Below, one piece after another: positions 12,491-56,168 of a stretch of DNA of 64,000 nucleotides (within the stretch, counting starts at the first letter, position 1; each line of letters starts with the position of its first letter). The notes beneath the pieces are model-generated. The model was given only the letters and a program-made list of their open reading frames with translations, ran no database searches and was not told the origin of the DNA. Origin of the DNA: Malacoraja senta (lineage: Eukaryota); assembly GCA_038087875.1 (NCBI GenBank), contig CM075989.1, forward strand, positions 14,880,001-14,944,000, read 5' to 3'. Position numbers and translations under genes: made by a program.

Positions 12491-12690
12491 CATTTTCTTG
12501 GTTCTTGGTCCTCTAAAAGATCCCAAATGGAATTGAAACTGGAGGTGGCGGAGGGTGGACTTAAGCGACACACACTCGCTGACTCACACGCACACTCACT
12601 GACTCTCACTCACTGACTCTCTCACCTCCTTCCCTCCCATACTCCCACACAGGCCGCGCTAGGCCGCCTGCCGGTTGTTCACCCATTAAT

Positions 12691-12989
12691 GAGGCACAGC
12701 TGGTAGAACTGTTGCCCCACAGCACCGGAGACCTGGGTTCTATCCTGACCTCAAGTGCTAACTGTGTGGAGTTTGCATGTTCTCCCTGTGATTTCCTATG
12801 GGTGCTCTGGTTTCCTCCCACGCACCAAAGACATGCGGGTTTGTTGGTTAATTGGCCTCTGTATATTGTCCCTAGTATGTAGGGAGTGGCTGAGAAAGTC
12901 TGCATAGAATTAGTGTGAATGAGTGATCAATGGTCAGCGTGGACTCAGTGGATCGTGGGGCCTGTTTCCATGCTGTATCTAAACTAAAC
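12691..12989 (+). mobile_element. HE1-type V-SINE
   Basis: Head, central domain and ctaaactaaac tail, similar to 3908-4222. Confidence 0.85.
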
Positions 12990-13160
12990 ATGCAAACTCT
13001 GCATGGATAGCACCCAAGATCAGGAGTGATCCTGGTTCACTTGCAAGCTGCACCACTGTCCCGCCCTTGATGCAATATGACAAAAAGGCAGCAAAGATCT
13101 GGTTTACTTTCAGACAAGGAATTGCAAAGGCAAGTGAAATTGCAAAGGCAAGAAGACACT

Positions 13161-13297
13161 TCTTCTTCTTTCGTGTGGCGTGCACAGCCTAAAGTTGTTA
13201 GACAACTTGTTCTAGTTGATCTTCTGTTTGTGCACGTCGAGTTGATTGCATTAGTCGAAACACGGCGGACCACGTGAAGGTTGCAATCTTCCACCCC
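13161..13297 (-). mobile_element. 137-nt non-autonomous retroposon with 5' HDV-like ribozyme, 3' hairpin and (AAG)n tail, inserted in a CR1 LINE
   Basis: Flanked by aagaagacact (13150-13160) and aagatgacact (13298-13308). Interrupts the LINE reading ...CKGKKTLIGVIYRPP. Tail AAAGAAGAAGA. Confidence 0.85.
13244..13297 (-). ncRNA. Minimal HDV-like (CPEB3-like) self-cleaving ribozyme fold
   Basis: GGGGUGG-AA-GAUUGCA-ACC-UUCACGU-GGU-CCGCCGU-G-UUUCGA-CUAA-UGCAAUC corresponds to P1, J1/2, P2, P3, L3, P3', P1', P1.1, mini-P4, J4/2, P2'. Confidence 0.82.
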
Positions 13298-16200
13298 AAG
13301 ATGACACTAATTGGTGTTATCTACAGACCCCCAAATAGTAGCCCGGATGTAGAGTGTAAGTTGCAGCAGGAGTTACAACTGGCATGTAACAAAGGTAATG
13401 CCACTGTGGTGATGGGGGATTTCAATATGCAGGTAGACTGGGAAAATCAGGTTGGTTCAGGACCCCAAGAAAGAGAGTTTGTAGAATGCCTCCGAGATGG
13501 ATTCTTAGAGCAGCTTGTAATGGAGCCGACCAGAGAAAAGGCAATTCTGGATTTAGTGTTGTCCAATGAACCAAATTTGATAAGAGAACTCGAGGTAAAG
13601 GAACCGCTTGGAGGTAGTGATCATAATATGATTAGTTTTAATCTGCAATGTGAGAAGGAGAAGGTTAAATCGGAAGTGTCAGTGATGCAGTTGAACAAAG
13701 GGGATTATGAAGGCATGAGAGAGGAGCTGGCCAAGGTAGACTGGAAAGGGATACTAGCAGGAATGACGGTGGAACAGCAATGGCAGGAATTTCTGGGCAT
13801 AATCCGGAAGACGCAGGATCATTTCATTCCAAAAAGGAAGAAAGATTCTAAGGGGAGTAGGAGGCAACCGTGGATGACAAGGGAAGTTAGGGATAAAAAT
13901 AAAACGAAAAGAAAAGATGTATAACACAGCAAAGAGTAGCCGGAAGCCAGAGGATTGGGAAACTTTCATAGGACAACAGAAGGAAACAAAACGAGCAATA
14001 CGGGCTGAAAAGATGAAGTACGAGGGGAAGCTGACCAGGAATGTAGATATGCTAGAAGGACAGTAAAAGCTTCTTTAGATATGTTAAGGGAAAAAGAATA
14101 GCAAAGTCAAATGTGGGTCCCTTGAAGGCAGACACGGGTGAAATTATTATGGGGAACAAGGAAATGGCAGAAGAGTTGAACAGGTACTTCGGATCTGTCT
14201 TCACTAAGGAAGACACAAACAATCTCCCAGAAGTACTGGAGGACAGAGGATCTAAGGGGTTCAAGGAACTGAAAGAAATTTTCATTAGGCGAGAAATAGT
14301 ATTGGGTAGGCTAATGGGACTGAAGGATGATAAATCCCCTGGGCCTGATGGACTGCATTCCAGGGTCCTCAGGGAGGTGGCTCTAGATATAGTGGACGCA
14401 TTGGTGATCATTTTCCAATGTTCAATAGATTCAGGATCAGTTCCTGTGGATTGGAGGATAGCTAATGTTATCACACTTTTCAAGAAAGGAGCGAGAGAGA
14501 AAACGGGGAACTACAGACCAGTTAGCCTGACTTTGGTGGTGGGAAAGATGCTGGAGTCAATTTATTAAAGAGGTAATAATGGGTCTTTTGTATAGCAGTA
14601 AAAGGATTTGTCCAAGTCAGCATGGATTTATGAAAGGAAAATTATGCTTGACTAATCTTCTGGAATTTTTTGAGGATGTGACAAGTAAAATGGATGAAGG
14701 GGAGCCAGTGGATGTAGTGTATCTAGACTTTCAGAAAGCCTTTGATAAGGTCCCGCACGGGAGACTGGTGACTAAAATTAGAGCACATGGTATTGGGGGT
14801 AGGGTGTTGATGTGGATAGAAAATTGGTTGACAGACAGGAAGCAAAGAGTAGGAGTGAACGGGTCCTTTAATGAATGGCAGGCAGTGGCGGGTGGAGTGC
14901 CGCAAGGATCGGTGTTGGGGCCGCAACTGTTTACCATATATATTAATGATTTGGAAGAGAGGATTAGGAGCAACACTAGCGAGTTTGCAGATGACACAAA
15001 GCTGGGTGGCAGTGTGAACTGTGAGAGGATGTTAGGAGGTTGCAGGGTGACCTGGACAGGTTGAGTGAGTGGGCAGATGCGTGGCAGATGCAGTATAACA
15101 TAGCTAAATGTGAGGTTATCCACTTTGGTGGCAAAAACAAGGGGGCAGATTATTATCTCAATGGGGTTAGGTTAGGTAAGGGGGAGGTACCGTGAGACCT
15201 GGGTGTCCTTGTACACCGGTCACTGAAAGTTGGCGTGCAGGTACAGCTGGTAGTGAAGAAAGCTAATGGAATGTTGGCTTTCATAACAAGAGGATTTCAG
15301 TTTAGGAGTAGAGAGGTTCTTCTGCAATCGTATAGGGCTCTAGTAAGACCACATCTGGAATATTGCGTACAGTTTTGGTCTCCTAATTTGAGGAAGGACA
15401 TCCTTGTGATTGAGGCAGTGCAGCATAGGTTCACAAGATTGATCCCTGGGATGACGGGACTGTCATATGAGGAAAGATTGAAAAGACTAGACTTGTATTC
15501 ACTGGAGTTTAGAAGGATGAGGGGCTATCTTATAGAACATATAAATTTATAAAAGGACTGGACATAGAAAACATAGAAAATAGGTGCAGGAGTAGGCCAT
15601 TCGGCCCTTCGAGCCTGCACCGCGAGCCTGCACCTGGACAAGCTAGATGCAGGAAAAATGTTCCCAATGTTGGGCGAGTCCAGAACCAGGAGCCACAGTC
15701 TTAGAATAAAGGGGAGGTCATTTAAGACTGAGGTGAGAAAAAACGTTTTCACCCAGAGAGTTGTGAATTTGTGGAATTCCCTGCCACAGAGGGCAGTGGA
15801 GGCCAAATCACTGGATGGATTTAAGAGAGAGTTAGATAGAGCTCTAGGGGCTAGAGAAATCAAGGGATATGGGGAGAAGGCAGGCACGGGTTATTGATTG
15901 GGGACGATGGTGGCGCTGGCTCGAAGGGCCGAATGGCCTCCTCCTGCACCTATTTTTTATGTTCTATGTTTCTATGTAAACATCATGGAGCAAGGAGGAG
16001 ACAGTGGCAAGGGAATGGGAAAAGTATCAGAGAACAAGGCTAATGGCTTCAATCTTCCCAGCGTTTAGTGACAGTAAATTACGGAGTATTTCCTGATAGT
16101 CTAGAGGTGGAGGGGGCTCAGTAGAAATGGTGAGTTAGCAGATACATAAAGAAACTGATGACGGTGTTGTTTCAGGTGGTGCTGCTGAGGGATGGGTCCG

Positions 16201-18069
16201 TTTTGCATTGTAGCTCTTCCAAGGCAGCAACTGGTTGAACCCAGGCTGACTTCCAGCTGCTGCACACGGTGAAGGCCTTATGCTTAATGAAATGAAGAAA
16301 GAGGCATGCAAGATTGCTCAATGTGTCACAATGTGGACAGTTTCGTCAGCATTCCTTCATGGTTGCAACAAGTCTCAGACATTTTACTACCGTATGAAAT
16401 CATTGTCTTTACACAAATCATTTTGTTTTTAAATGAAGCTAAATACAGTTGGTAACTCACTTAAATTGAATAAATCCCCCGTAAAAAGGAGCTGAATAAG
16501 ATGCTGATGGCTACACGTGTGCATTCATTCATGTCTTTCCAAATTGGCTTCCATGGCAATGACCTATCACAGCAGGACCTCGGCTTATTGTTATGGAAAT
16601 CATTCTTAGCCAATCAGAAAATTATTATCCCAGCTCAATGAGTTACCATGTCCCCCTGTCCTCTCACACAATGCAGACTTATAAAGCAAATGTGTGAGGA
16701 TGGAATTATTGTTCAGCTGGCTCCAAACAGAAACATCAGAAACACACAAATGGCAACAAGCTGGGCCAGTGCAGCAACTGAAAACATTCAGATGAAAAAC
16801 CCAATAACCTACTGGAATTATCACAGCAACACAAAGCAAACTGCGAACTGAACTGGTGATCCGACAAGAGCGGACTTATCTTCCACAGGGAGGGAATTTC
16901 CAGTGCTTGGCTGAAAGAAGTCACAGCCTTGTCCCCATTCAAACTCTCCCCACATTAAATTACTGACCCAGCGTGACAGGCACATATGTGGAGCAACGCT
17001 CCTGCTCTCATCCTTGTTTTGTTTGAAGGAATCTGCACTGCACAATGAGCAGCCGTCTCCATGCCTGACCTGTCAACACTAATTATCTGCTTAGCTTACT
17101 TTGACTTTTATTCACCCTCATCTAACTCTGCCGACCTGTTTGTTCCTTCCTTTCCTCCCCCCCCCCCCCCCCCCAACTTTTATTAATTTCTTCCATTTAA
17201 GTTCTAATTCAAACAACGGTGGTTTTTACTGGAACCATTTACAGCATTCTGCAGGAGCTATTGTACAGCATTTGGTAAGAAGGATTGACCTGGATGTTTC
17301 ATCAAGTAACATGCTTATGACGTTAAAGAGGGACTGACTGCATTCATGATAAAGTCTGTGCTCTTCCTGCCAGCTCATCTGACCTGTTAATTACCCCCCG
17401 AACAGATCACAAGCCAAAGAGTCTGGAACTGGGGACTTGCCCTGGGGATGTTCTCCCAATTAAATTTATACCTTGTGATGGCTCTCCCTCCAGCCACCAC
17501 CCCCCCCCCCTCCCCTCTCTTAGTGTTAACCGCCACATTTTCAATCTGATCAGGGCCTCCCACCACCCATCCTTCAACTGCTTGACCTGCTAACGTCTGC
17601 TAACCTTTTCTAAAATTCTATAGTATACGAGGTCAAAGTGGTGCTCTATAATTTCCATTGTGAGTCTGGGTTGGGGGTGGGAGATGAGTTAAGGAATAGG
17701 GCAGCGATTTTACATATGATAATGTTAGGGAAGGCAAAGTATAAAATGATACGTTTCTACTTAATGCTTCCAGTTAATGTGGAGAACGTAATGTTGGAGG
17801 TGGGGTACTGTTCAGCAAAAATGTTTGCGAATCTCTCCTCTATAAAATAGGCTTTGCTCATGAAAATGCAATTGCAGAGTCCTCGAGGGGAAGTTAGGTC
17901 ACAGCTCGCAGGTGAAGGGTCAGGGGTTAGGGGCCCAAAATGGGTGAGTTAGGTCAGAGTGATAGATGGAGGGAGTAGGGTTCAGAACAGCAGGGTCATG
18001 CAGCAACATTGGGAGGGGTCCTGTTCTCATTTGGGTATTGGAAAGCTTGGATGTGGAGCAGTTAATTAC

Positions 18070-28459: not shown

Positions 28460-28915
28460 ATGTCATACAGCATGGAAACGGGTCCTTTGCCCCAATTTGT
28501 CCACCCCGACCAATGTGCCCCATCAATACTAGACCCACCTGCCTGCATTTGTCCCATATCCCTCTACCTTCTGAACCTTCTGAATGTTGTAGTCGGCAGG
28601 GCAGTACTCTGCATATCGCCAACTTGGACAATTTTACATTTTTATCAAGTCAATTAATCAAGCCAATTAACCTACAAACCTGTACGTCTTTGGAGTGTGG
28701 GAGGAAACCGAAGATCTCGGAGAAAACCCACGCAGATCACGGAGAGAACCTACAAACTCCATACAGACAGCACCCGTAGTCGGGATCGAACCCGGGCCTC
28801 TGGCGCTGCATTTTGCTGTAAGGCAGCAACTCTACCGCTGTGCCACCGTGACCACCCTCTACATTTATCCTATCCCATGTTAAATGTTTCTTAAATGTTG
28901 TGGTAGTACCTACCT
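28460..28915 (-). mobile_element. HE1-type V-SINE (~28625-28857) nested in a CR1 3' tail fragment
   Basis: Little-diverged SINE head and central domain in reverse complement, flanked by CR1 tail sequence. Confidence 0.8.
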
Positions 28916-42359: not shown

Positions 42360-42668
42360 GGCAGTCACGGTACCGCAGCGGTTGAGTTGCTGCCTTACAG
42401 CGAATGCAGCGCCAGAGACCCGGGTTCGATCCCGACTACGGGTGCTGTCTGTACGGAGTTTGTACGTTCCCCCCGTGACCTGCGTGGGTTTTCTCCGAGA
42501 TCTTCGGTTTCCTCCCACACTCCAAAGACATACAGGTTTGTAGGTTAATTGGCTTGGTAAATGTAAAAATTGTACCTAGTGGGTGTAGGATAGTGTTAAT
42601 GTGCGGTCGGCGCGGACCCGGTGGGTCGAAGGGCCTGTGTCCATGCTGTATCTCTGAACTAAACTAAA
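42360..42668 (+). mobile_element. HE1-type V-SINE, full length, nested in an antisense CR1 3' fragment (~42270-42835)
   Basis: Good B box (gggttcgatccc), central domain and ctaaactaaa tail. Confidence 0.88.
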
Positions 42669-55447: not shown

Positions 55448-56168
55448 CAGTCACAGTGGGACAGCGGTAGAGTTCCTGCCTTACAGCAAAATGCAGCGCC
55501 GGAGACCCGGGTTCGATCCCGACTACGGGCGCTCTCTGTACGGACTTTGTACGTTCTCCCCGTGACCAAGCGTGGGTTTTATCAGAGATCTTCGGTTTCC
55601 TCCCACATTCCAAAGACATACAGGTTTGTAGGTTAATTGGCTTGATAAATGTAAAAAAAATTGTCCAGTATAAAATTGTCCAACTTCCAGTATAGTCCCT
55701 GGTGGATTCTTCAGAAGGTACAAGGTACAGAAACCTTCTCTACTTTTAAATAGATTGCTTCCTGACAAGCAATACTTGCAATATTTTGCAGGGATCATAA
55801 TTTTGCCATTTTAATGTTTTACAAATTATTACTAATTTTATCATAATGAAGTAGCTTTATTCTAGGCAAATATCTCAGGCTCAGTGGTAGAGTTGCCGCC
55901 TTACAACAGAGACTTAGGTTTGATTCCGACTATGAGTGCTGTGTACACGGAGTTTGTACGTTCTTCCCGTGACCGTGTGGGATTTCCCCGTGTGCTCCGG
56001 CTTCCTCCCACACTCCAAAGATACACGGGTTTGTAGGAAATTTGGCTTCAGCAAAAATGTTTAAATTGTACCTAGTGTAGGATAGTGTTAGTACACGGGG
56101 ATGACTGATCGGCACGGACTCGTTGGGCCAAAGGGCCTGTTTCTGTGCTGTATCTTTAACCTAAACTG
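55448..56168 (+). mobile_element. Two HE1-type V-SINEs (~55448-55681 truncated; ~55878-56168)
   Basis: tRNA heads and central domains; the second copy has the tail. Confidence 0.8.

What the first reader, a model, noticed from the sequence alone, without database searches (positions are those of the whole stretch)
13161..13297. Ribozyme-headed mini-retroposon: a 137-nt SINE whose 5' 54 nt are a complete minimal HDV-like ribozyme
Seen: the minus strand from 13297 reads GGGGUGG AA GAUUGCA ACC UUCACGU GGU CCGCCGU G UUUCGA CUAA UGCAAUC. This maps element by element onto the HDV nested double pseudoknot. P1 is GGGGUGG/CCGCCGU, with the G1-U wobble and one G-G mismatch at 13263. P2 is a perfect 7-bp GAUUGCA/UGCAAUC and P3 is ACC/GGU. 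L3 is UUCACGU, followed by a single-G P1.1 and a vestigial P4 (U-UUCG-A). J4/2 is CUAA, with the putative catalytic C at 13254. The 11-bp TSD abuts G1, so the element begins at the predicted self-cleavage site (1-nt ambiguity). The 3' half is a nested hairpin (CGTGCACA 13179-13186 / TGTGCACG 13229-13236 enclosing AAGTTGT-tag-ACAACTT) followed by an (AAG)n tail. No tRNA A/B box is evident. Known: L3 UUCACGU is, from memory, the L3 of the mammalian CPEB3 ribozyme. HDV-like ribozymes process the 5' ends of R2, RTE and L1Tc retrotransposons and their short derivatives. Inference: this is a promoterless SINE family that cuts itself out of read-through transcripts and is mobilised by an RTE-like LINE. 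I do not know of such a family described from cartilaginous fish, and dispersed copies could cleave host pre-mRNAs.
Basis: partly seen in the sequence, partly recalled or inferred. Interest (0 to 1): 0.92.

Follow-up and report, generated by a model that had tools for sequence, protein, structure and literature searches.

The report
Ribozyme-headed mini retroposon, high copy
This 137-base insertion is one slightly damaged copy of a very abundant short jumping element in a cartilaginous fish; its first 54 bases fit a stripped-down HDV/CPEB3-type self-cutting RNA, a known trick of LINE-dependent elements, though cutting itself is untested.

Summary
On the minus strand, 13297-13244 reads exactly as described and fits every part of an HDV-like double pseudoknot. 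The element has a 10/11 target-site duplication, a nested 3' hairpin and an (AAG)4 tail.

New evidence from public reads:
- The element is hugely multicopy in at least nine coded organisms.
- Copies stop at G1 and at the tail, and run into unrelated flanks.
- The only polymorphisms above 30% in the head lie at the two unconstrained linker positions.

A structure descriptor finds only this site in the window. The chance rate is 0.005 per 128 kb for the majority form.

The L3 loop and the G37/U38 junction match the mammalian CPEB3 ribozyme, as checked in papers.

Against: Rfam gives only an 11-bit HDV-family hit. No compensatory covariation was seen. Poly(A) RNA reads run through the cut site with no pile of 5' ends. 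The partner LINE is not in the window, so RTE is unsupported; untested notes from this scan point to a Vingi-like LINE.

Best reading: a bipartite non-autonomous LINE (SIDE-like). This scan already found the family many times elsewhere in this genome.

The parts
13298..13308 (-). Upstream copy of the target-site duplication (reads AGTGTCATCTT on the minus strand)
   Evidence: It matches 13160-13150 at 10 of 11 positions. Joints 13160->13310/13312/13313 in contigs of other copies of the host LINE skip the element plus about one TSD copy (short sides, so weak).
13291..13297 (-). P1 5' strand, G1-G7. G1 at 13297 is the predicted first base after the cut and the first base of the family.
   Evidence: Loose ends pile at 13297/13298 with flank agreement about 0.33-0.38 in six runs.
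13289..13290 (-). J1/2 linker (AA). Position 8 (13290) is A/G polymorphic in the family at 43-55%.
13282..13288 (-). P2 5' strand, GAUUGCA
   Evidence: It forms a perfect 7 bp with 13250-13244.
13269..13281 (-). P3 (ACC/GGU) enclosing the 7-nt L3 UUCACGU. C22 is the proposed P1.1 partner of G37.
   Evidence: aligned to P3/L3 of RF02682. L3 is identical to the mouse CPEB3 ribozyme (primer GTTCACGTCGCGGCC; residue numbering). P3 is identical to the Drosophila R2 core.
13262..13268 (-). P1 3' strand, CCGCCGU. The G at 13263 is this copy's private mismatch; the family majority is C.
   Evidence: At 13263 the + strand reads G instead of C in 95-99.7% of depth in X1, X3, X16, X15, X4 and X38. The change lowers P1+P3 from -7.1 to -12.4 kcal/mol and makes it the MFE.
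13260..13261 (-). J1/4, G37 U38. Proposed P1.1: G37-C22 plus U38.U21, as modelled for CPEB3.
13255..13259 (-). UUCGA, a 5-nt linker in the place of P4 (effectively P4-less)
   Evidence: a 20-nt model insert is replaced by 5 nt.
13251..13254 (-). J4/2, CUAA. The putative catalytic C44 is at 13254. Position 45 (13253) is U/G/A polymorphic.
   Evidence: 13253 A>C is 8-9% in DNA contigs and 41% in RNA reads of organism M. 13254 G>A is only 1.2% in X4.
13244..13250 (-). P2 3' strand, UGCAAUC; end of the 54-nt head
13171..13243 (-). 3' domain: outer 8-bp stem (13236-13229 / 13186-13179) around an inner 7-bp hairpin (13208-13192), then CCACACGA. This is the presumed recognition module for the partner LINE's reverse transcriptase.
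   Evidence: The family-majority differences at 13200/13199 fall in the inner triloop.
13159..13170 (-). (AAG)4 tail; the last AG overlaps the TSD
   Evidence: Loose ends before 13159 end in CTTCTT, so other copies carry longer (AAG)n.
13150..13160 (-). Downstream copy of the target-site duplication (AGTGTCTTCTT)
13298..15064 (+). Host of the insertion: a 5'-truncated LINE fragment with endonuclease and reverse-transcriptase ORF pieces. It is not the partner.
   Evidence: Pfam Exo_endo_phos_2 (13298-13924) and RVT_1 (14579-15064). It has no similarity to the element's tail.

Best explanation
This is one recent, slightly damaged copy of a very abundant short non-autonomous non-LTR retroposon. 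The best label is 'bipartite non-autonomous LINE', as for Drosophila SIDEs or trypanosome NARTc/RIME. It is not a Pol III SINE.

Its RNA has two modules.
- The first 54 nt are a minimal, P4-less HDV-like double-pseudoknot ribozyme with a CPEB3-type core.
- The last roughly 80 nt are a structured hairpin plus an (AAG)n repeat.

Inferred mechanism:
1. Source copies have no promoter of their own, so they are transcribed as part of longer transcripts.
2. The head cuts just 5' of G1 and frees an RNA that starts exactly at G1.
3. The tail is bound by the reverse transcriptase of a stringent-type LINE.
4. The (AAG)n anneals to a nicked target, and target-primed reverse transcription makes a full-length copy flanked by an 11-bp duplication.

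Shown: family size, sharp ends at G1 and at the tail, the TSD, the fit of the fold, the repair of P1 in the family majority, and the lack of a tRNA head.

Inferred: catalysis, read-through transcription and the identity of the partner. The partner is possibly a Vingi/Ingi-like LINE, according to unchecked notes of this scan.

The window copy itself carries a G2xG35 mismatch next to the cut site and is probably a weak or dead ribozyme.
For: (1) Family. Summed word depth over 13164-13295 is 0.6-1.9 million in X1/X3 and up to 11.7 million in X4. The low-copy flank 13044-13139 reads 0-25. Words of the 137-mer are held by runs of organisms A, B, C, E, G and L, and reads by M.

(2) Ends. Loose ends pile at 13297/13298 and at 13159/13161. 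Flank agreement is only 0.32-0.44, so the flanks are unrelated. There is a 10/11 TSD.

(3) Fold.
- The descriptor hit is unique in the window. Chance rates are 0.14 and 0.005 per 128 kb.
- The only Rfam match on the 71-nt stretch is an HDV family. It spans exactly 13244-13297 on the minus strand and aligns P1, P3, L3 and J4/2 as proposed.

(4) The family majority has C at position 35, which restores G2-C35 (95-99.7%). P1+P3 then becomes the MFE.

(5) Pattern of variation in the head.
- The only polymorphisms above 30% are at position 8 (J1/2) and position 45 (the N of C-N-R-A). Both positions are free in HDV-like ribozymes.
- The other variants are CpG transitions.
- C44 changes in only 1.2% of DNA depth.

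(6) The head has about 2-2.5 times the depth of the tail in X4. This fits a conserved module, or one shared between families.

(7) The core matches known active ribozymes.
- L3 UUCACGU and the G37/U38 numbering match CPEB3.
- P3 ACC/GGU matches Drosophila R2.

(8) Precedent. Ribozyme-plus-tail non-autonomous elements are documented for R2/R1, L1Tc/NARTc, RTE and Ingi.

(9) There is no tRNA and no B box.
Against: - No cleavage data exist.
- The Rfam score is far below threshold: 11.3 bits against 44, E = 3.1 on 71 nt. The CPEB3 and HDV models gave no hit.
- No compensatory double changes were seen. The P1' variants keep pairing, but any transition opposite a G/U-rich strand would.
- In poly(A) RNA of organism M, 93% of reads run on into flanks and no pile of starts appears at G1. 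Reads crossing the 5' junction (252) are as many as those crossing the 3' junction (242). Most transcribed copies are therefore not visibly cut at steady state.
- P4 is missing and P1.1 has only one Watson-Crick pair. Both are expected to slow an HDV-like ribozyme.
- A sharp 5' end would also follow from an internal promoter.
- The partner LINE was not found in the window.
Confidence: 0.72

Rival explanations
1. The head is a relic. The element descends from a LINE 5' end that once carried an HDV-like ribozyme, but the P4-less 54-nt version no longer cuts usefully. The sharp G1 start comes from transcription initiation at an internal promoter in the same sequence, as in Pr77 of L1Tc/NARTc.
For: - No pile of RNA 5' ends at G1, and there is free read-through in poly(A) RNA.
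- The Rfam score is weak.
- P4 is absent and P1.1 is weak.
- Pr77 shows that one 77-nt head can be both promoter and ribozyme (abstracts of PMC3383444 and PMC8190864).
Against: - The family majority keeps all helices perfect and repairs this copy's P1 mismatch.
- High-frequency variation avoids every constrained position.
- No promoter motif was identified, and there are no A/B boxes.
- Standard size-selected poly(A) RNA-seq is a poor detector of a ~140-nt processed RNA.
Confidence: 0.15
2. One reading: a promoterless SINE mobilised by an RTE-clade LINE.
For: RTE elements are known to carry 5' HDV-like ribozymes, to produce bipartite non-autonomous derivatives and to end in short repeats.
Against: - No RTE sequence is linked to the element here.
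- The window's only LINE next to it shares nothing with its tail.
- Several unchecked notes of this scan report a Vingi/Ingi-like LINE in this genome with a CPEB3-type head and the same 3' terminus.
Confidence: 0.12
3. Chance resemblance: an ordinary short retroposon of unknown head origin that merely happens to fit an HDV-like descriptor.
For: - Loose descriptors hit random sequence at 0.14-0.62 per 128 kb.
- There is no covariation and no Rfam hit above threshold.
Against: - The fit begins on the element's first base.
- The majority form has a chance rate of 0.005 per 128 kb.
- L3, J1/4 and J4/2 match active ribozymes letter for letter.
- The sole Rfam match among 4227 families is an HDV family with exact boundaries.
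Confidence: 0.04

Closest known systems
R2 SIDEs and R2/R1 hybrid SIDEs of Drosophila (Eickbush & Eickbush 2012, PMC3414825)
   Same: - Short, ORF-less, not Pol III.
- A 5' HDV-like ribozyme joined directly to the 3' end recognised by a LINE's reverse transcriptase.
- The P3 sequence is even the same (ACC...GGU).
   Different: SIDEs sit in rDNA at fixed sites, are few in number, have a full-size ribozyme with P4, and are shown to cleave. This family is dispersed, very abundant, lives in a vertebrate, has a P4-less 54-nt head, and is untested.
NARTc/RIME and other L1Tc/Ingi-clade derivatives with the Pr77/L1TcRz head (PMC3185411, PMC3383444, PMC4035085)
   Same: Dispersed non-autonomous derivatives that keep the LINE's first ~77 nt, an HDV-like ribozyme at the exact 5' end. 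Vingi is the sister clade of Ingi.
   Different: These are trypanosomatid, have poly(A) tails, and their head doubles as a promoter. Here the tail is a hairpin plus (AAG)n, and no promoter function is known.
Mammalian CPEB3 intronic ribozyme
   Same: - Identical 7-nt L3 (UUCACGU).
- The same G37 U38 junction, with no J1.1/4.
- The same residue numbering up to position 38.
- J4/2 is C-G/U-A-A.
   Different: CPEB3 is a single-copy intronic element with a real P4 (67 nt), and its P2 and P3 sequences differ. The Rfam CPEB3 model does not hit this sequence. This one is a mobile-element head.
Minimal HDV-like ribozymes of bacteria and phages (e.g. the Rfam HDV-F-prausnitzii family)
   Same: A compact double pseudoknot. 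It is the only Rfam family that aligns, with P1, P3, L3 and J4/2 in register.
   Different: The score is 11.3 bits against a threshold of 44, and the setting is bacterial with no retroelement link. Whether the published human-microbiome and phage 'theta' minimal forms lack P4 in the same way rests on my memory and was not checked here.
Bipartite non-autonomous RTE/Vingi elements in Repbase (Kojima 2018, PMC5786205)
   Same: Internal-deletion derivatives that keep only the LINE's 5' end and 3' end. That paper links the pattern to 5' ribozymes.
   Different: [quoted passage not shown] It names no cartilaginous-fish family. Repbase and Dfam could not be searched here.

Membership tests
HDV-like double-pseudoknot self-cleaving ribozymes | 7-bp P1 starting at the cut site with a G1.U wobble | tested here: met
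   6 of 7 pairs in this copy (G2xG35). The family majority has 7 of 7 (C at 13263 in 95-99.7% of depth).
HDV-like double-pseudoknot self-cleaving ribozymes | P2 pseudoknot between the segment after P1 and the 3' end | tested here: met
   Perfect 7 bp, 13288-13282 with 13250-13244.
HDV-like double-pseudoknot self-cleaving ribozymes | 3-bp P3 with a 7-nt L3 that runs straight into P1' | tested here: met
   ACC / UUCACGU / GGU followed directly by P1'.
HDV-like double-pseudoknot self-cleaving ribozymes | P1.1 between L3 and the junction after P1' | tested here: inconclusive
   C22-G37 plus U21.U38 is possible, the same as the CPEB3 model. That is one Watson-Crick pair only, and no structural test is possible.
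HDV-like double-pseudoknot self-cleaving ribozymes | Catalytic C at the start of J4/2 (C-N-R-A) just before P2' | tested here: met
   C44 U A A. C44 changes in 1.2% of DNA depth, while N45 varies freely.
HDV-like double-pseudoknot self-cleaving ribozymes | P4 helix | tested here: not met
   Only a 5-nt UUCGA linker. From established knowledge, P4 is dispensable for HDV catalysis, so this alone does not exclude activity.
HDV-like double-pseudoknot self-cleaving ribozymes | Match to a curated covariance model above its gathering score | tested here: not met
   Best is RF02682 at 11.3 bits against 44. The HDV and CPEB3 models gave no hit. These models cannot score the pseudoknots.
HDV-like double-pseudoknot self-cleaving ribozymes | Compensatory covariation in the helices | tested here: inconclusive
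   Only single-sided, pair-keeping transitions appear in P1'. No P2 or P3 variants are among the 40 best-supported differences. No individual copies could be fetched.
HDV-like double-pseudoknot self-cleaving ribozymes | Site-specific, Mg2+-dependent self-cleavage 5' of G1 | not testable with these tools
   Needs a bench assay. RNA reads show no pile of ends at G1.
Bipartite non-autonomous LINE / SIDE | Dispersed copies with TSDs, a LINE-type 3' repeat tail and no ORF | tested here: met
   10/11 TSD, variable (AAG)n, 137 nt, huge depth and unrelated flanks.
Bipartite non-autonomous LINE / SIDE | 5' end and 3' end shared with an autonomous LINE of the same genome | not tested
   No such LINE is in the window. 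Leads to a Vingi-like LINE come only from unchecked scan notes.
SINE in the strict sense (Pol III, tRNA/5S/7SL head) | Small-RNA-derived head with A and B boxes | tested here: not met
   ARAGORN finds nothing in 13050-13400, and no B-box match within one mismatch lies in the element.
CPEB3 ribozyme family | Conserved single-copy site in a CPEB3 intron, matching the Rfam CPEB3 model | tested here: not met
   This is a dispersed repeat with no CPEB3-model hit. Only the core letters match.

The most novel reading that the evidence does not exclude
Heads of this kind, a CPEB3-type minimal HDV ribozyme carried by a vertebrate LINE lineage and its mini derivatives, are the evolutionary source of the mammalian CPEB3 intronic ribozyme, whose origin is unknown. 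On this reading, the mammalian ribozyme is an exapted retroposon head. The thousands of sense-oriented intronic copies in cartilaginous fish are a natural pool of co-transcriptional pre-mRNA cutters.
Probability: 0.2. Interest if true: 0.8.

Novelty: new variant of a known kind. Interest (0 to 1): 0.6.

Why it matters
HDV-like ribozymes are known to trim the 5' ends of several LINE clades and of a few short derivatives, mostly in insects and trypanosomes. This family would extend that picture in three ways.
- It is a vertebrate case with a very high copy number.
- It has the smallest head so far tied to a retroelement: 54 nt with no P4.
- Its catalytic core matches, letter for letter, the mammalian CPEB3 ribozyme, whose ancestry is an open question.

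If the majority sequence cleaves, it would be a compact natural ribozyme for engineering RNA 5' ends. It would also be a model for how promoterless retroposons reach huge numbers, and a concrete candidate lineage for the origin of CPEB3-type ribozymes.

If it does not cleave, it would be a well-preserved relic that marks which LINE clade once used the trick.

Tried and rejected
- **Rfam scan of 2.5 kb:** no HDV or CPEB3 hit at E<=10. The 71-nt rescan gave only a sub-threshold HDV-family hit.
- **Other copies or a partner LINE in the window:** none found by blastn, by a 3-mismatch pattern search, or by a scan for (AAG)n and GTGCAC.
- **Collection scans for the head:**
  - Metagenome contigs gave 0 hits.
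  - Viral contigs gave 0 hits.
  - Bacterial and archaeal genomes gave 4 hits. About four are expected by chance, and the hits lie in unrelated sequence with no P1 or P2, so I rejected them.
- **Fetching more host DNA through the neighbouring LINE's RT fragment:** this gave 27 kb from two ENA contigs with no copy of the element. The route was too low-yield and I dropped it.
- **Searching the protein database with the element's open frame, to fish out ORFs that span other copies:** no candidate.
- **DNA raw-read runs X22 and X23:** 0 reads laid, so they are no test.
- **RNA raw reads as a test of in vivo cutting:** no pile of ends at G1. I report this as no support, not as refutation. The library is poly(A)-selected and size-selected, from another species, and most copies are old.
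- **Copy number:** the tool's summed word depth is not a copy number. I give only the ratio to the flank, 10^4-10^5.
- **Literature:** no paper was found that describes a ribozyme-headed element in cartilaginous fish or a ribozyme in Vingi. Ruminski 2011, Kojima 2011 and Chadalavada 2010 are not held. Repbase and Dfam cannot be searched here.
- **tRNA-derived head:** rejected.

Full report
**What is in the sequence**

Counting from G1 = 13297:
- P1 is 1-7 and pairs with 30-36. It has a G1.U36 wobble and a single G2xG35 mismatch, at 13263.
- J1/2 is AA.
- P2 is 10-16 and pairs perfectly with 48-54.
- P3 is ACC/GGU around the 7-nt loop UUCACGU.
- G37 U38 follow P1'.
- Five nucleotides (UUCGA) stand where P4 should be.
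- J4/2 is CUAA, with C44 at 13254.
- The head ends at 13244.

Downstream lie an 8-bp outer stem (13236-13229 / 13186-13179), an inner 7-bp hairpin (13208-13192) and (AAG)4 at 13170-13159. The flanking duplication is 11 nt with one mismatch (13308-13298 versus 13160-13150). ARAGORN finds no tRNA, and there is no B box within one mismatch.

**Is the fold more than chance?**

I wrote an HDV-type descriptor with these rules:
- G1, and a 7-bp P1 with at most one mismatch;
- J1/2 of 0-6 nt;
- P2 of at least 5 bp;
- a 3-bp P3 and an L3 of 6-8 nt with a C for P1.1;
- a G after P1';
- a P4 region of 0-60 nt;
- C-N-R-A before P2'.

On both strands of the window it hits only this site. Dinucleotide shuffles give 0.62 loci per 128 kb, or 0.14 with P2 of at least 7 bp. 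For the family-majority form with perfect P1 they give 0.005. So a lone hit would be unremarkable. A hit that starts on the first base of a TSD-flanked insertion is not.

Rfam gives nothing on 2.5 kb. On the 71-nt stretch, the single match among 4227 families is an HDV family (RF02682). It spans exactly 13244-13297 on the minus strand, with P1, P3, L3 and J4/2 aligned as proposed. It scores only 11.3 bits against a threshold of 44. Covariance models cannot score P2 or P1.1, so this is a pointer and not a membership.

**The family**

Laying public contigs and reads on the stretch was the most informative step.

- *Abundance.* In DNA contig sets of organisms A, B and C, the summed word depth over the element is 0.6-1.9 million (X1, X3) and up to 11.7 million (X4). 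The low-copy flank 13044-13139 reads 0-25. The tool warns that this is not a copy number. The ratio of 10^4-10^5 shows only that the family is very large.
- *Spread.* Words of the 137-mer occur in runs labelled as at least eight organisms, and reads in a ninth.
- *Ends.* Hundreds of contigs stop matching at 13297/13298 and at 13159/13161, then continue into sequence with no consensus (agreement 0.32-0.44). So copies end at G1 and at the tail in unrelated places.
- *Tail.* The letters beyond 13159 end in CTTCTT, so other copies have longer (AAG)n.
- *Empty sites.* A few contigs from other copies of the host LINE join 13160 to 13310-13313. They skip the element plus about one TSD copy. The sides are short, so this is weak.

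**The family majority repairs the fold**

At 13263 the family reads C on the element strand in 95-99.7% of depth in all six informative runs. With that one letter, P1+P3 drops from -7.1 to -12.4 kcal/mol and becomes the minimum-energy fold of the 54-mer. The window copy therefore carries a private mutation next to the cut site and is probably a poor ribozyme.

**Pattern of variation in the head**

- Only two positions are polymorphic above 30%. One is position 8 in J1/2 (A/G). The other is position 45, the N of C-N-R-A (U/G/A; CGAA, as in HDV and CPEB3, is common in organism M).
- Both are positions that HDV-like ribozymes leave free. That rule rests on established knowledge of the family.
- The other listed variants are CpG transitions (24/25, 31/32, 41/42) and U36>C.
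- C44 changes in 1.2% of DNA depth.
- The three P1' variants all keep a standard pair. Any transition opposite a G/U-rich strand would do so, so this is not covariation.
- No P2 or P3 variant is among the 40 best-supported differences, but 19 rows were not shown.
- The head has 2-2.5 times the depth of the tail in X4. This fits a better-conserved module, or one shared between families.

**RNA**

In a poly(A) paired-end run of organism M, 855 reads match the element.
- 93% run on into unlike flanks.
- Both orientations are present, at about 1:2.
- No place passes the test for many molecules beginning or ending.
- Reads crossing the 5' junction (252) equal those crossing the 3' junction (242).

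So most transcribed copies are passengers in longer RNAs and are not visibly cut at steady state. This counts against widespread efficient cleavage. It does not test the source copies, because the library is size-selected, comes from another species, and mostly samples old copies.

**Comparison with known systems**

Several comparisons were checked in papers.
- A structural preprint numbers the CPEB3 loop as U21 C22 A23 C24 G25 U26. It pairs U21/C22 with U38/G37 and has no J1.1/4.
- A mouse CPEB3 primer reads GTTCACGTCGCGGCC. So L3 and the junction are identical to this head, with the same numbering up to position 38.
- Primers for the Drosophila R2 core read ACC-TCCTCGT-GGT, the same P3.
- The architecture is that of R2 SIDEs and R2/R1 hybrid SIDEs: a ribozyme fused to a LINE 3' end, not transcribed by Pol III, and shown to cleave.
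- The same architecture is seen in NARTc/RIME.
- Kojima 2018 notes that bipartite non-autonomous LINEs are reported only from RTE, Ingi, Vingi and R2. [quoted passage not shown]

I found no paper on such an element in cartilaginous fish. Repbase and Dfam could not be searched.

**Partner and setting**

- *Setting.* The element lies, in opposite orientation, in the 5' part of a truncated LINE. That LINE has endonuclease and RT ORF pieces and shares nothing with the element's tail. The RT piece is closest to ENA contigs of unknown origin (up to 85% identity). Its closest named relative is Callorhinchus milii (73%), with turtles near 60%. This is consistent with a cartilaginous fish.
- *Earlier finds.* This scan had already noted the family more than fifteen times elsewhere in the genome, with several follow-ups reaching the same reading. 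Unchecked notes report a Vingi/Ingi-like LINE with a CPEB3-type head and the same 3' terminus. I could not test that.

**Verdict**

The best explanation is a ribozyme-headed bipartite non-autonomous LINE whose source copies free their own 5' end by an HDV-like cut (confidence 0.72). The design is known. The new points are the vertebrate host, the abundance, the 54-nt P4-less head and the CPEB3-identical core. Catalysis, covariation and the partner remain open.

Noticed in passing
window 13298-15977 (+): The element sits inside a 5'-truncated LINE fragment with Exo_endo_phos_2 and RVT_1 ORF pieces. A short (CTATGTTT)n array at 15950-15977 may be its 3' repeat tail. This family is itself high-copy in the same runs (depth 10^5-10^6).
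   Followed up: partly
window 28782-28793, 42422-42433, 55509-55520 (also 59876, 62504): There are three exact B-box-like GGTTCGATCCC sites, plus near matches. In total 14 matches were found against 5.2 expected by chance. They probably mark tRNA-derived SINE copies elsewhere in the window.
   Followed up: no
window 12900-12995: Another repeat family, with depth 2x10^4-7x10^4 in X1/X3. The window copy differs from the family majority at 12952-12957. Its sharp loose ends at 12903 and 12951 have fairly consistent continuations (agreement 0.62-0.68).
   Followed up: no
window 13223-13250: A subfamily of the same element reads differently between the head and the outer stem (loose-end consensus with agreement 0.78-0.81 in X16 and X38). 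Other contigs share only 13225-13298 and then diverge (X4, X15). The head therefore seems to be joined to more than one downstream sequence.
   Followed up: partly
window 13160-13297, RNA run X38: Read pairs whose first mate lies on the minus strand are about twice as many as those whose first mate lies on the plus strand. If the library is of the usual dUTP type, RNA antisense to the element is twice as abundant as sense RNA. The library type is not known.
   Followed up: no
window 12569-12625 and 17157-17174: A CACT-rich compound microsatellite lies at 12569-12625. A run of 18 C lies at 17157-17174.
   Followed up: no
L003-L006 (bacterial MAG contigs): The 21-nt degenerate core pattern occurs four times in bacterial genomes. 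Three are in the same conserved stretch of Acidobacteriota/Pyrinomonadaceae. About four hits are expected by chance, and none has a P1 or P2 partner.
   Followed up: yes
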